Positions 15,269 to 38,304 of a DNA stretch of 64,000 nucleotides are shown piece by piece. This stretch comes from Octopus sinensis (lineage: Eukaryota). Where the stretch lies: contig NC_043009.1 in the NCBI RefSeq assembly GCF_006345805.1, forward strand, positions 41,540,001 to 41,604,000, read 5' to 3'. The translations under genes and the position numbers were made by a program. The stretch's first letter is position 1. Every line of letters starts with the position of its first letter. The notes beneath the pieces are model-generated. The model had not been told where the DNA came from. It did not search any database and saw nothing but the letters and a program-made list of their open reading frames with translations.

Positions 15269-15691
15269 TCACGCTTATATCGATGAATATGAAGCCCACT
15301 GTGTGTTTATAGATATGGATGGTAGGAGTTCGATAACGTACTTGCAATATATACAGGGTGAGTCCGCACCTATAATCAGCTGGCGGAAGATCTGCCCGGG
15401 GTTAAATTTACACACACACATATATTATATATATATATATTATATATATATATATATATATTTCGTTTTGGGATTTGTTGCAAGATTCTTTATATGAGTT
15501 CGTGTGCTGAAGCATATTCTGTTGTGTCTGGGGAGAGTCATTTCCTTTTTGTGCCTTATAATGTAACACACTCACCGTAAAATTTCCACTTATTTCTTAA
15601 TTTTTCTTATTTTTTATTTTCTATTTTTTTCTTTCTATTTTCCTTTTCCTAAAATTTTCGTTGCTTCTTGCAACCTTTTCAATAGTCTTGA

Positions 15692-15739
<48 letters not shown>

Positions 15740-15858
15740 CGGCAGTATTTATATTTGCTGCCGATAAGTTTGGCGCGAATGCGTTGGTCTTGAAAATTTT
15801 AAGACAGATATTCCCAGGCATTGATACAGTCGCCTCGTGTATATCCGTCTCTCCCATT

Positions 15859-15956
15859 TCTTTTACCATGAAGTGTGACTATGGTACTAGCTTTAATTTA
15901 AATTTAATTAAGCTGGCTATCATTAAAGACACTGACACGATCCATCGTATAAAAGA
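15859..15956 (+). ncRNA. Type-I hammerhead ribozyme, copy 1 (core degenerate in this sequence)
   Basis: TCTTTTA-ccatga-AGTGT...ACACT-gaca-CGATcCATCG-TA-TAAAAGA. The helices are intact, but the core reads CCATGA and GACA. Confidence 0.55.
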
Positions 15957-16316
15957 TGATTGGGTACCCGTTTTTAAATTTTCACCTTATTTCCGAATTT
16001 CCTACTCTTCTGGCGGTTCGAGTTCTGGCTGCTCTTTCTGGTGGACGAATGGCTGTTTAGGCATCCTAATTGTTATATTTATAGATAATTTAGTCTTTGA
16101 CTTTTTCTCTTTTCCACTAGGCCTCTGGTAGCGATAAATTTTTATGAATTTTTTGCTACCCTAATTGATTAATATAATTTTCTGACTAATTCTGAGATTG
16201 AATCGGCAGTTTATATTTGCTGCGATAAGTTTGGCGCGAATTCGTTGGTTGAAAATTTTAAGACAGATATCCCCGAGGCATTGATCAGTCGCCTCGGTAT
16301 ATCCGTCTCTCCCAGG

Positions 16317-16416
16317 TTTTTTACTGATGAAGTGGGTGACCTATGGTAGACTAGCTTAATTAATTTAATAAAGCGGCTACATTAAAGACACTGAAACGAT
16401 GCAATCGTATAAAAGA
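16317..16416 (+). ncRNA. Type-I hammerhead ribozyme, copy 2
   Basis: TTTTTTA-CTGATGA(16324-30)-AGTG...CACT-GAAA(16393-96)-CGAT gca ATCG-TA(16408-09)-TAAAAGA. All core nucleotides and three helices are present. Confidence 0.85.
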
Positions 16417-16782
16417 TGATTAGGGTAAACGTTTTTAAATTTTCACCTTATTTCCGAATTGCAACTACTTGGCGTTCGAGTTCTGGCTGCTTCTTCTGGT
16501 GGACGATTGGCCTGTTTAGCCATTCCTAAATTGTTATATTTATATATATTTAGTCTTGACTATTTTCTCTTTCCACAGGCCGCTGGTAGCGATAAATTTT
16601 TACTGAATTTTTTGCTACCCTAATTGATTAATTGATAATTTTCTGACTATTCTGAGATTGAATCGGCAGTTTATATTGCTGCCGATAAGTTTGTCGTCGA
16701 ATGCGTTGGTCTTGAAAATTTTAAGACGATATTCCCGAGGCATTGATCAGTCGCCTCGTGTATAATCCGTCTCTCCCAGGTT

Positions 16783-16880
16783 TCTTTACTGATGAAGTGT
16801 GACCTATGGTAAACTAGCTTATTTAATTTAATTAAGCTGGTCTATCATTAAGACACTGAAACGATGCATCGTATAAAAGA
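16783..16880 (+). ncRNA. Type-I hammerhead ribozyme, copy 3
   Basis: TCTTTA-CTGATGA(16789-95)-AGTGT...ACACT-GAAA(16858-61)-CGATGCATCG-TA(16872-73)-TAAAAGA. Helix III is the palindrome ACGATGCATCGT. Confidence 0.88.
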
Positions 16881-17002
16881 TGAATTAGGGTACACGTTTT
16901 AATTTTCACTTATTTCCGAATTGCCTACTTGGCGGTTCGAGATTCTAGCTGCTCTTCTTTCTGGTGGACGAATGGCCTGTTTAGGCCATTCCTAAATTGT
17001 TA

Positions 17003-17052
<50 letters not shown>

Positions 17053-17338
17053 ATGTTTGTATGAATGTATATTTGTGTATTTATATATCTCTCATCTCCC
17101 ACTATCTTACTCTTTACAAAATCTTAATACATTTCCATAATATATTTCCATCTCTTACCCTCTCTCTCCTTCCTCCCTCTCTTTGCTTTATTATTCGTCT
17201 TGGTTGTTTCATTCTCCGTTTTGGTGTTTATGCCGTTTTTAGTAGGTTGATCAACCATGTAGAAAAATCTACAGAAAAAAAAAGCCCCCTCCAAAATACG
17301 TTCCGGCTGGGACCCTCTTCATCTTGTATTTAGATACC

Positions 17339-37215: not shown

Positions 37216-37251
<36 letters not shown>

Positions 37252-37253
<2 letters not shown>

Positions 37254-38304
37254 GGCGTTTGATAGCATCCCCCACACATGGATCCTCGAAACACTAGCCA
37301 TTAACAAAGTAGCACCAACAATTTTAGAATACATAGGACACTCTATGAATAAATGGCAAACAGTGCTACAGCTCCAAACAAAAGAGGGACTCGTGAAAAC
37401 CAAAGCCATCCCCATTAGAAGAGGAATATTCCAGGGAGACACGCTCTCTCCACTTCTTTTCTGCTTGGCACTGCCACCTCTATCTGATATGCTAAATAGG
37501 ACTGGATGCGGATATAAATGTTACGAAAAAACGATCAGCCACCTTTTATATATGGATGACCTAAAACTATACGCTACAAATGACAAACAGCTGGAAACAC
37601 TACTAAAGACAGTTCATGGATTTACCAAAGAAATAGATATGAAATTTGGGTTAGAAAAATGCGCCAAAGTAACCCTGAAAAGAGGAAAACTAGCTAAGAG
37701 TAGCAACATCACACTAGATAAAGCCAATGAAATAAGAAAATTAGACCAAAGCCAAACTTACAAATATTTAGGAATCCATGAACTAGATAAGACACAACAC
37801 ACACAAATGAAAGAGAAAATAAATAAATAAAACTATAGACGAGTTAGATCAATACTAAAAACAGAGCTCAAAGCTAAAAACAAGATAATAGGTATTAACA
37901 CTTTAGCCGTCCCAGTTATAAGTTACAGCTACAATATCTTTAACTGGACGCTAAATGAACTAACCAAAATAGATAGGAAAACAAGAAAAATAATGACAGG
38001 ATCTAGGATGCATCACCCAAGATCTGACGTAGAAAGGCTATATATACAACGTATAGAAGGTGGTAGAGGCCTTATAAAGCTGGAAAACTACTATAAAATA
38101 ACCACCATAGGACTGCAAAAATACCTACTTCAGAAGCAAGGAAAACTGATACAAATAGCGGCAAAACACGAGCAAAACAAAAAATTGTTCTCAGTATCTA
38201 AGGAAGCTGACAAATACAAACAAGAAATCATACCACCTAACAAATATGAAGAAGAAGAAGAAAGAAGAAAGAAGAAGAAGAAGAAAGAAGAAGAAGAAGA
38301 AGAA

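What the first reader, a model, noticed from the sequence alone, without database searches (positions are those of the whole stretch)
15740..17007. Tandem hammerhead-ribozyme array: candidate cephalopod retrozyme producing ~462-nt self-cleaved or circular RNA
Seen: about 2.75 head-to-tail units inserted in (TA)n. Each has helix I (TCTTTTA/TAAAAGA), CUGAUGA, helix II (AGUGU/ACACU), GAAA, a palindromic helix III (ACGAUGCAUCGU) and a GUA triplet. Predicted cleavage falls after 15949, 16409 and 16873, releasing monomers of 460 and 464 nt. Cores are intact in copies 2 and 3, and no RT or endonuclease ORF is present. Established: type-I hammerheads with palindromic helix III typify Penelope-like elements. 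Metazoan non-LTR retrozymes are tandem hammerhead repeats whose transcripts self-cleave into monomers that circularise. Inference: this is a non-autonomous retrozyme-like family with a comparatively long monomer, plausibly mobilised by a Penelope RT. I do not know of one described from octopus and cannot check here.
Basis: partly seen in the sequence, partly recalled or inferred. Interest (0 to 1): 0.93.

Follow-up and report, generated by a model that had tools for sequence, protein, structure and literature searches.

The report
Decayed octopus hammerhead retrozyme insertion
This is an old, partly broken insertion of an abundant non-coding mobile element whose ~474-base repeat carries a self-cutting hammerhead RNA motif and whose insertion scars point to Penelope-like retrotransposon enzymes, making it a new cephalopod member of the known animal "retrozyme" class rather than a new kind of element.

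Summary
Window 15738-17018 is 2.8 head-to-tail units (460-464 nt) set in (TA)n. Each unit has a type-I hammerhead layout, and the predicted cleavage sites (after 15949, 16409, 16873) are correct.

It is a decayed copy of family A (474-nt unit, at least 513 intact cores genome-wide). Sister family B (492 nt, at least 1217 cores) is 72% identical. Comparing A with B shows compensatory changes in helices I and II, and the only core difference is at the free position N7.

Rfam models miss the motif, probably because of a ~60-nt insert in helix II and an A at position 10.1.

The insertion scars indicate retrotransposition of the Penelope type:
- 59 of 62 3' ends abut (TA)n.
- There are two fixed 3' termini, each preceded by a conserved hairpin.
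- 5' ends are scattered and arrays span 0.2-6.2 units.
- About 80% of arrays have an inverted head-to-head partner, and 19 of 21 pairs use one terminus of each kind.

Intact Neptune-like Penelope elements that also end in (TA)n exist in this genome, but no specific partner was identified.

Self-cleavage, transcription and circular RNA remain untested. This scan has already found sister families elsewhere in this genome. Verdict: a new member of a known kind (metazoan non-LTR retrozymes).

The parts
15713..15739 (.). (TA)13.5 microsatellite at the 5' side of the insertion (target DNA), preceded by (CT)n
   Evidence: TRF; sequence. 9 of 12 solo arrays genome-wide have (TA)n at the 5' side.
15738..15949 (+). 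5'-truncated first unit (family unit positions ~259-474). The insertion starts here with no inverted partner.
   Evidence: BLAST against a family-typical unit, 92.7% identity; array map.
15859..15956 (+). Hammerhead copy 1, inactivated: CC-AUGA instead of CUGAUGA, GACA instead of GAAA, and a C in the helix III loop. Helix I is intact.
   Evidence: Sequence; alignment; covariance model 45.3 bits.
15950..16409 (+). Full unit, 460 nt from cleavage site to cleavage site, 90.7% identical to a family-typical unit
16317..16416 (+). Hammerhead copy 2: core boxes intact, helix I UUUUUUA/UAAAAGA, small insertions in helix II and in the helix III loop, distal helix II damaged. Predicted cut after 16409.
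   Evidence: Sequence; alignment; covariance model 46.6 bits.
16410..16873 (+). Full unit, 464 nt, 95.2% identical to a family-typical unit
16782..16880 (+). Hammerhead copy 3, the best preserved: UUCUUUA-CUGAUGA-AGUGU...(52-nt distal hairpin and internal loop)...ACACU-GAAA-CGAUGCAUCG-UA|UAAAAGA. Predicted cut after 16873.
   Evidence: Sequence; fold; covariance model 63.5 bits, E 7e-13.
16874..17018 (+). Terminal partial unit (unit positions 1-145) ending at family terminus 1
   Evidence: About 23 A-family arrays end at the same position.
16970..17007 (+). 3'-end module: hairpin GAAUGGCC/GGCCAUUC followed by the tail CCUAAAUUGUUAUAU that merges into (TA)n
   Evidence: Sequence; conserved hairpin at columns 99-120 of the A+B consensus fold; 3'-end table.
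16586..16640 (+). Second 3'-end module, internal and unused at this locus: hairpin GGUAGC...GCUACC plus tail CCUAAUUGAUUAAU. A second copy lies at about 16128-16175.
   Evidence: Sequence; hairpin at columns 186-227 with an A-U to G-C compensatory change. About 21 A-family arrays end here.
17001..17049 (.). (TA)24.5 microsatellite at the 3' side of the insertion (target DNA)
   Evidence: TRF. 59 of 62 distinct family 3' ends abut (TA)n.

Best explanation
The array is one old insertion of a non-coding, non-autonomous retroelement of the metazoan non-LTR retrozyme kind. I call it family A: unit 474 nt, 36% GC.

Each unit encodes a type-I hammerhead with a 7-bp helix I, a helix II of 5 bp extended by a ~60-nt hairpin, and a helix III that is a 12-nt palindrome. 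Helix III can form a 4-bp hairpin or a 12-bp duplex between two ribozymes.

Inferred life cycle:
1. Arrays are transcribed.
2. [quoted passage not shown]
3. A host ligase may circularise that RNA.
4. The RT-endonuclease of a Penelope-like element nicks a (TA)n microsatellite and primes cDNA synthesis at one of two internal hairpin-plus-tail modules of the RNA.
5. Synthesis runs around the template more than once and stops at random.
6. Usually the other side of the break primes a second cDNA at the other module, which gives two head-to-head arrays.

Shown here: the motif, its conservation and covariation, the copy number, and the insertion anatomy. Inferred: cleavage, circles, and the identity of the RT. 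The window copy itself is decayed and probably inert.
For: - Motif and tandem array in the window.
- Family A has at least 513 exact core words and family B at least 1217, with reversed controls at 0. Copies lie on many chromosomes.
- Sampled genomic units differ from their family majority by only 0.6-0.8%.
- Core boxes are kept in 31 of 36 (A) and 41 of 51 (B) distinct contexts.
- A versus B: helix I UCUUUUA/UAAAAGA becomes UUUCUUA/UAAGAAA, helix II AGUGU/ACACU becomes AUCUG/CAGAU, helix III changes A-U to G-U, and the only core change is at N7.
- Formal pair count: 97.5% of cells paired against 29-51% when partners are slid; 11 pairs changed on both sides against 1-4; 0 of 500 shuffles reach the observed values.
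- The hammerhead fold lies within 1.0-1.8 kcal/mol of the MFE. The dimer MFE is the double hammerhead with 12 of 12 helix III nucleotides paired between copies.
- The whole monomer is strongly structured, z = -9.0, with 9 compensatory pairs among 106.
- It is non-coding: the longest stop-free frame is 89 aa and there is no Pfam match.
- Retro-insertion scars: 3' ends are bimodal at two fixed positions, 5' ends are scattered, and arrays span 0.2-6.2 units.
- 59 of 62 3' ends abut (TA)n, against a 3.7% background.
- 29 of 34 (A) and 26 of 33 (B) 5' junctions have an inverted partner, with a gap or overlap of a few nt.
- Units of one array and of both arms share private variants: 0.2-0.6% against 1.2-1.3% between loci.
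- 19 of 21 pairs use one terminus of each kind, p about 1e-4.
- Penelope-like elements with intact RT plus C-terminal GIY-YIG ORFs are abundant: 5029 GIY-YIG candidates. Two independent copies of one such family end on (TA)n at the same terminus, and the ORFs carry the C-x4-C-x2-C linker.
- Literature: tandem and inverted, 5'-truncated, one-sided-tail insertions and a (TA)n bias are Penelope-like hallmarks (PMC8557442). The model of target-primed copying of a retrozyme circRNA into tandem cDNA is in PMC7229834. Retrozymes as Penelope-like derivatives is argued in 10.64898/2026.07.22.740005.
Against: - No Rfam hammerhead model matches the window, even at E<=10.
- Position 10.1 is A (A-U, or A.C in 15 of 51 distinct rows), where the Rfam consensus and other hammerheads in this genome have G-C. 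Catalysis could therefore be weak or absent.
- The loop-loop tertiary contacts typical of fast type-I hammerheads were not identified.
- No RNA evidence: the runs that hold the sequence are assembled contigs whose RNA status is only guessed, with no read ends.
- Covariation rests on essentially two lineages and on a structure-fitted alignment.
- The three Penelope-like copies examined share no extended sequence or 3' terminus with the unit, so the partner is unidentified.
- 5' ends show no pile-up at the cleavage site, so the scars give no direct trace of cleavage in vivo.
Confidence: 0.85

Rival explanations
1. Nested alternative on the template only. The reverse-transcribed RNA is an uncleaved linear multimer read from an existing array, not a circular monomer. 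The hammerhead would then be mostly inactive on the molecules that get copied.
For: Arrays longer than one unit and scattered 5' ends fit a long linear template as well as a circle. The A10.1 and A.C variants could mean weak cleavage. No circle was observed.
Against: A multimer carries many copies of both priming modules, so the two arms should pick termini independently. Instead, 19 of 21 pairs use one of each. No 3' flank transduction was seen in 62 distinct 3' ends, which stop exactly at one of two positions. The hammerhead is conserved with covariation, which is hard to explain if it were never used.
Confidence: 0.3
2. A SINE-like element mobilised by a LINE reverse transcriptase rather than by a Penelope-like element. 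In this reading, the microsatellite at the 3' end and the inverted arms come from LINE-type target-primed reverse transcription and twin priming.
For: 5' truncation, a fixed 3' end and microsatellite-associated 3' ends also occur with some LINE/SINE pairs (own knowledge). LINE-type RT fragments are present, for example window 37216-37827, RVT_1 E 5e-19.
Against: Both outer ends of the inverted pairs are true 3' termini, and the pairs occur at about 80% of junctions. LINE twin priming inverts an internal 5' segment and is a minority outcome (own knowledge). Tandem multimers, hammerheads, the (TA)n bias and a one-sided extension are described for Penelope-like elements (PMC8557442). Penelope-like copies in this genome end on (TA)n themselves.
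Confidence: 0.08
3. Ordinary satellite or minisatellite DNA spread by unequal crossing-over and segmental duplication. The hammerhead-like motif would be a non-functional relic.
For: The arrangement is tandem and some arrays exceed 10 units. Local duplications of whole array blocks exist, for example C5:61.685-61.690 Mb and L002.
Against: There are hundreds of dispersed loci on most chromosomes with the same two exact 3' ends, variable 5' ends and a (TA)n target. Compensatory changes keep three helices between subfamilies that are 72% identical. The only core difference is at the free position N7.
Confidence: 0.04
4. The arrays are merely pseudo-LTR fragments of a full-length autonomous Penelope-like element, not an independent non-autonomous family.
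For: Penelope-like elements carry hammerheads in their pseudo-LTRs and leave many 5'-truncated copies (PMC8557442; 10.64898/2026.07.22.740005).
Against: In 60 loci the arrays consist only of the 474- or 492-nt unit repeated up to 6 or more times. No Penelope-like coding sequence adjoins them; tblastn finds only one unrelated GIY-YIG fragment about 900 nt from an array. The three Penelope-like copies examined share no sequence with the unit.
Confidence: 0.03

Closest known systems
Metazoan non-LTR retrozymes (Cervera and de la Pena 2020, PMC7229834: coral, mussel, axolotl)
   Same: Type-I hammerhead in every unit of a short, AT-rich, non-coding tandem repeat. Dispersed multi-copy families without LTR, PBS or PPT. 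Highly self-paired monomer. Co-occurrence with Penelope-like elements.
   Different: The monomer is 474-492 nt, against the reported ~170-400 nt. Helix II carries a ~60-nt insert and starts with A10.1-U11.1. Expression as linear or circular RNA is not shown here. The precise (TA)n target, the dual 3' termini and the head-to-head pairs are documented here but not in that paper (word search).
Penelope-like elements and their pseudo-LTR hammerheads (Craig et al. 2021, PMC8557442; Cervera and de la Pena 2014, as cited there)
   Same: 5' truncation, partial tandems, an adjacent inverted 5'-truncated copy, an extension at one end only, (TA)n insertion bias, and type-I hammerheads with a palindromic helix III.
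   Different: There is no RT or GIY-YIG ORF. The unit is a few hundred nt repeated many times. The one-sided extension is 84-106 nt (the distance between the two termini) rather than 30-40 bp. No sequence is shared with the three Penelope-like copies examined.
Classical hammerhead satellites: newt satellite 2 (~330 bp), the cave-cricket pDo500 satellite (~500 bp), and Schistosoma Sm-alpha (own knowledge; newt satellite also in PMC7229834)
   Same: Repeats of a few hundred bp, each with a type-I hammerhead. Dimeric (double-hammerhead) cleavage through a weak or palindromic helix III is described for the amphibian repeats.
   Different: Here helix III can form a 4-bp hairpin on its own. The copies are dispersed short insertions in (TA)n rather than long satellite blocks.
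Plant LTR retrozymes (Cervera et al. 2016, PMC4918200)
   Same: A non-autonomous retroelement whose transcript is thought to be cut by hammerheads and circularised.
   Different: Plant retrozymes have type-III hammerheads inside LTRs, a PBS and PPT, 4-bp target duplications and Gypsy-type mobilisation. None of these applies here.
Sister families in the same genome noted earlier by this scan (491-, 505-, 484- and ~350-nt units)
   Same: The same kind of element and the same reading. My family B (492 nt) is evidently the 491-nt family of those notes.
   Different: The window carries the 474-nt family A, which is 72% identical to B, and as a decayed copy.

Membership tests
Hammerhead ribozyme, type I | Conserved core CUGANGA ... 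GAAA ... UH with the cleavage site 3' of H17 | tested here: met
   Window copies 2 and 3 and the family majority keep every core position. Copy 1 is broken. A and B differ in the core only at N7.
Hammerhead ribozyme, type I | Three helices around the core with helix I open (type-I topology), supported by covariation | tested here: met
   97.5% of cells paired against 29-51% in slid controls; 11 pairs changed on both sides; 0 of 500 shuffles reach this. Caveat: effectively two lineages and a model-fitted alignment.
Hammerhead ribozyme, type I | Score at or above the gathering threshold of an Rfam hammerhead model (RF00163 and clan) | tested here: not met
   No hit in the window at gathering scores or at E<=10, although RF00163 finds canonical hammerheads elsewhere in the genome. 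The likely cause is the ~60-nt helix II insert and A10.1 measured against a 45-position model. That cause is inference.
Hammerhead ribozyme, type I | G10.1-C11.1 pair at the base of helix II, and loop-loop tertiary contacts | tested here: not met
   The 10.1-11.1 pair is A-U in 36 and A.C in 15 of 51 distinct rows. Tertiary contacts were not identifiable from sequence.
Hammerhead ribozyme, type I | [quoted passage not shown] | not testable with these tools
   Only thermodynamics is available: the active fold lies 1.0-1.8 kcal/mol above the MFE, and the dimer MFE is a double hammerhead.
Metazoan non-LTR retrozyme | Short AT-rich tandem repeats, each unit with a type-I hammerhead, non-coding, without LTR, PBS or PPT | tested here: met
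   GC is 36% and the longest stop-free frame is 89 aa. No Pfam match.
Metazoan non-LTR retrozyme | Dispersed multi-copy family with signs of retrotransposition | tested here: met
Metazoan non-LTR retrozyme | Monomer of about 170-400 nt (descriptive range in PMC7229834) | tested here: not met
   474 nt (A) and 492 nt (B). This is a size range, not a mechanism.
Metazoan non-LTR retrozyme | [quoted passage not shown] | tested here: inconclusive
   The runs holding the sequence are contigs with only guessed RNA status. No read ends and no RNA-Seq-labelled run were listed.
Penelope-like-element-dependent (non-autonomous) element | Penelope-type insertion anatomy: 5' truncation, tandems, adjacent inverted truncated copy, one-sided extension, microsatellite target | tested here: met
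   compared with the description in PMC8557442.
Penelope-like-element-dependent (non-autonomous) element | Sequence shared with the terminal or pseudo-LTR region of an autonomous Penelope-like element of the same genome | tested here: not met
   No similarity beyond (TA)n to three intact copies (two families).
Penelope-like-element-dependent (non-autonomous) element | Potentially active autonomous Penelope-like elements with the same target preference in the genome | tested here: met
   Intact 775-883-aa RT plus C-terminal GIY-YIG ORFs. L068 and L069 end at the same terminus on (TA)n. The C-x4-C-x2-C linker is present.

The most novel reading that the evidence does not exclude
Each retrozyme RNA carries two copies of a priming module: a conserved hairpin followed by a CCUAAAUUG-type tail. 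The two sides of one (TA)n break use these modules at the same time on a single template molecule, most simply a monomeric circle engaged by a dimeric Penelope-like RT-endonuclease.

This would explain four observations:
- Head-to-head pairs almost always combine terminus 1 with terminus 2.
- Both arms share private variants.
- Arrays exceed one unit.
- The duplicated module is kept in families A, B and C.

If true, these scars would be the first genomic footprint of symmetric, rolling-circle, target-primed reverse transcription of a ribozyme circRNA. They would also explain the enigmatic one-sided 'tail' of Penelope-like insertions.
Probability: 0.3. Interest if true: 0.7.

Novelty: new member of a known kind. 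Interest (0 to 1): 0.45.

Why it matters
Animal retrozymes and their suspected dependence on Penelope-like elements are published. The link, however, rests mostly on co-occurrence and, in frogs, on similarity to pseudo-LTRs.

These octopus families are young, abundant and inserted at a recognisable target. Their scars can therefore be read directly: fixed dual 3' ends behind conserved hairpins, random 5' ends, arrays longer than the template unit, and paired inverted arms that use one terminus of each kind. That makes the proposed step of target-primed copying of a ribozyme RNA into tandem DNA concretely testable, with defined RNA modules and a defined DNA target.

It also shows that Rfam-based screens miss a whole group of hammerheads with long helix II inserts. 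The window locus itself is an ordinary decayed copy.

Tried and rejected
- Rfam cmscan of the whole window at gathering scores, and of 15600-17100 at E<=10: no hammerhead, only chance hits in (TA)n.
- A first pattern search failed on syntax and was not repeated.
- MAFFT alignment of A and B hammerheads misregisters the 5' strand of helix II. I therefore parsed the segments directly and used a covariance-model alignment.
- RNA evidence gave no verdict. The first run search listed only contig-level runs with guessed RNA status. The second, restricted to RNA-Seq libraries, listed none.
- Laying four runs showed contigs on both arrays and none on the unique flank, in every run including the probable DNA run. 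This shows presence in three or more coded organisms but not transcription, ends or circles. A higher B-to-A depth ratio in one guessed-RNA run is not usable, by the tool's own warning.
- Partner search: three intact Penelope-like copies share nothing with the unit except (TA)n. tblastn of Penelope-like ORFs against all held loci found only one unrelated fragment.
- Families C and D show no BLAST similarity to A, so they could not be added to the formal covariation count.
- The idea that cDNA 5' ends would mark the cleavage site was tested and not supported: 5' ends are scattered.
- A quick regex scan missed the A copies because of lazy matching. This was irrelevant to the result.
- Earlier-notes look-ups for a named partner or for RNA evidence returned nothing.
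Full report
**The observation**

The sequence at 15738-17015 is a head-to-tail array of 2.8 units, period 459-461, 88% matches. It lies between (TA)13.5 and (TA)24.5. The GUA triplets end at 15949, 16409 and 16873, so the predicted 460- and 464-nt monomers are correct.

Copy 3 (16782-16880) is the best preserved. Copy 2 keeps both core boxes but has small insertions. Copy 1 has lost CUGAUGA and GAAA. The only open frame touching the array has no Pfam match.

The same type-I model does find canonical short hammerheads elsewhere in this genome.

**The family**

The genome has 2.72 Gb.

A search of the genome with one window unit gives 1555 first-look candidates on most chromosomes. Their units are 474 nt. 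I call this family A.

One locus also carried an array only about 72% identical. This is family B: unit 492 nt, copies 97-99% alike, at least 799 candidates, arrays of up to more than 10 units.

Exact core-plus-helix-II words occur 513 times (A) and 1217 times (B), evenly on both strands, against 0 for reversed controls.

Sampled genomic units differ from their family's column majority by only 0.6-0.8%. The two full window units differ by 3.7-5.1% plus 15-29 indel columns. The window therefore holds an old, decayed insertion of a family that was active recently. It is the only copy in the window.

**Is the hammerhead real?**

Within each family the motif is nearly invariant. Both core boxes are kept in 31 of 36 (A) and 41 of 51 (B) distinct contexts.

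Between families the helices change but stay paired:

| Element | Family A | Family B |
|---|---|---|
| Helix I | UCUUUUA/UAAAAGA | UUUCUUA/UAAGAAA |
| Helix II | AGUGU/ACACU | AUCUG/CAGAU |
| Helix III | contains an A-U pair | that pair becomes G-U |
| Core | CUGAUGA | CUGAAGA (differs only at N7, the free position) |

I built a covariance model from B with the hammerhead structure given explicitly. It recovers all A and B units and the three window copies at 63.5, 46.6 and 45.3 bits. On its alignment:
- 97.5% of cells pair, against 29-51% when partners are slid.
- 11 pairs change on both sides, against 1-4 in the slid controls.
- No shuffle out of 500 reaches the observed values.

The caveat is that this is effectively a two-lineage contrast on a structure-fitted alignment.

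Three further lineages with the same architecture occur in the fetched loci: a long helix II insert of 42-48 nt and a palindromic helix III. They are too different to align.

Thermodynamically, the active fold lies 1.0-1.8 kcal/mol above the monomer MFE. The dimer MFE is a domain-swapped double hammerhead in which all 12 helix III nucleotides pair between molecules, about 14 kcal/mol better than two monomers.

Unusual features:
- The ~60-nt helix II insert.
- A at position 10.1, paired with U, or mispaired with C in 15 of 51 distinct rows, in both families.

These features probably explain the Rfam miss. They leave catalytic efficiency open.

**The rest of the unit**

The 474-nt monomer is very strongly structured (MFE -150.7 kcal/mol, z = -9.0). 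A consensus fold of A and B units gives 106 pairs with 9 compensatory changes. GC is 36%, and four tandem units contain no stop-free frame longer than 89 aa.

**Insertion anatomy**

I mapped arrays in 60 loci with a multimer query.
- **3' ends are bimodal.** About 23 A arrays end near unit position 145 and about 21 near 228. About 17 B arrays end near 131 and about 16 near 237.
- **Each terminus follows a conserved hairpin.** The hairpin is followed by a shared tail, CCUAAAUUGUUAUAU or CCUAAAUUGAUUAAU, with B and C equivalents.
- **The target is (TA)n.** 59 of 62 distinct 3' ends abut (TA)n, while only 3.7% of the window lies in such tracts. 9 of 12 solo arrays also have (TA)n at the 5' side.
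- **5' ends are scattered** around the whole unit, with no pile-up at the cleavage site. Complete arrays measure 0.2-6.2 units.
- **Most arrays have an inverted partner.** At 29 of 34 (A) and 26 of 33 (B) 5' junctions a second, inverted array lies head-to-head, with a gap or overlap of a few nucleotides.
- **Each insertion looks like a single event.** Units of one array, and of the two arms of one locus, differ by a median of 0.2-0.6%, against 1.2-1.3% between loci.
- **The two arms use different termini.** In 19 of 21 complete pairs, one arm ends at terminus 1 and the other at terminus 2 (binomial p about 1e-4). Family C in L068 shows the same.

The window array is one of the minority without an inverted arm. 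It starts at unit position about 259 directly on (TA)n and ends at terminus 1.

**What this implies**

A hammerhead-cleaved linear monomer cannot be the template. It would give inserts of at most one unit that end at the cleavage site. The template is either a circle or an uncleaved multimer, primed internally at one of two modules by a nicked (TA)n end.

The rule of one terminus of each kind per pair is most simply explained if both sides of the break prime on one molecule that carries a single copy of each module, that is, a monomeric circle. This step is inference.

My odds, given a retrozyme: circle about 0.45, linear multimer about 0.3, undecided otherwise.

**Who moves it?**

Craig et al. 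2021 (PMC8557442) describe these as hallmarks of Penelope-like elements: 5' truncation, partial tandems, an adjacent inverted truncated copy, an extension at one end only, and a (TA)n bias.

GIY-YIG domains are very abundant in this genome: 5029 candidates, many in intact frames of 775-883 aa. Three fetched copies encode RT plus a C-terminal GIY-YIG. They carry a C-x4-C-x2-C linker of the Neptune/Nematis type. Two independent copies of one family end at the same terminus directly on (TA)n.

So Penelope-type mobilisation is well supported by the scars, but the partner is not identified.

**Expression**

No run on record as RNA was listed. Contigs from four runs of three or more coded organisms lie on both arrays and not on the unique flank. 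This is equally expected for low-coverage DNA, and contigs show no molecule ends. Transcription, cleavage in vivo and circles therefore remain untested.

**Comparison and novelty**

The element matches the published class of metazoan non-LTR retrozymes (PMC7229834). It also matches the recent proposal that these derive from Penelope-like elements (10.64898/2026.07.22.740005). No cephalopod case appears in the held literature.

Differences from the published class are the larger monomer, the long helix II, A10.1, and the clearly readable (TA)n-targeted dual-terminus anatomy.

This scan has already described sister families on other DNA of this genome and read them the same way. I treated those notes as leads only, and my tests agree with them.

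Verdict: a real feature and a new member of a known kind. The locus itself is an ordinary decayed copy. The family is a good system for testing how retrozyme RNA is copied into DNA.

Column majorities were used only inside scripts to measure divergence.

Noticed in passing
L068:5770-6860 (G000:C6, about 12.735 Mb): A third hammerhead family (C) with the same layout: head-to-head inverted arms in (TA)n, one arm ending at each of two TA-rich termini, and a hammerhead GUUUUGG-CUGACGA-GCUA..43 nt..UAGC-GAAA-CAAUUG-UC|CCAAAAU. It has no BLAST similarity to A apart from short boxes.
   Followed up: partly
L068:5372-5650: A solo fragment between two (TA)n tracts with another hammerhead-like motif (GCGG-CUGACGA-A GGCU..AGCC A-GAAA-CAUAUG-UA|CCGC). 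It has an A.A mismatch at 10.1-11.1. The same microsatellite cluster also holds a full Penelope-like element and family C, so (TA)n tracts act as nested insertion hotspots.
   Followed up: no
Unit A position ~287, unit B ~297, family C ~301; in the window 15767-15780 and 16228-16240 (mutated in copy 3 near 16689): The GC-rich box (A/G)TTTGGCGC(G/C) is conserved in families A, B and C, which are otherwise unalignable. From my own knowledge it matches the E2F-site consensus TTTSGCGC. Whether it is a promoter element, a protein-binding site or a structural element is unknown.
   Followed up: partly
Families A and B, position 11.1 of the hammerhead (for example L012:461-578, L057:2170-2291): Both families carry a parallel U/C polymorphism at 11.1, giving A-U or A.C at the base of helix II (15 of 51 distinct rows have A.C). 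The site sits in a CpG/TpG context, so it may be deamination decay or a functional attenuation switch.
   Followed up: partly
L011:1940-2030: At one head-to-head junction the strand switch is centred exactly on the helix III palindrome: ...CATCTTTTA-TACGATGCATCGTA-TAAAAGATG.... This looks like a template switch or snap-back at the palindrome.
   Followed up: no
L066:1337-2219 (G000:C16, about 25.146 Mb): Two Rfam-positive canonical type-I hammerheads lie 431 nt apart in a duplicated unit that includes (TC)n and (TA)n. This is another hammerhead repeat family with a short helix II.
   Followed up: partly
L063:2011-2125: A 5S rRNA-like sequence (46.1 bits, above gathering) lies about 500 nt downstream of a canonical type-I hammerhead on the same strand.
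   Followed up: no
L068:840-5040, L069, L070: [quoted passage not shown] L068 and L069 (92% identical) both end ...TTTTTTACAAA directly on (TA)n. A GAAAC-AUGU element lies about 70 nt before that end. Earlier notes (s1-115871, s1-117321) describe variant hammerheads at Neptune-like 3' ends.
   Followed up: partly
window:37216-38701: Reverse-transcriptase fragments in several frames. 37216-37827 matches RVT_1 at E 5e-19, much stronger than the Penelope-like RTs, so this is probably a LINE remnant unrelated to the array.
   Followed up: partly
window:12871: A weak hammerhead-like string (UUUAU-CUGAUGA-GUGU..31..GUGC, helix III of only 2 bp). It is probably chance.
   Followed up: no
L026:167-427: A GIY-YIG endonuclease fragment, about 32% identical to the Penelope-like ORF2s, lies about 900 nt from a family A array. 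It is not contiguous with the array.
   Followed up: no
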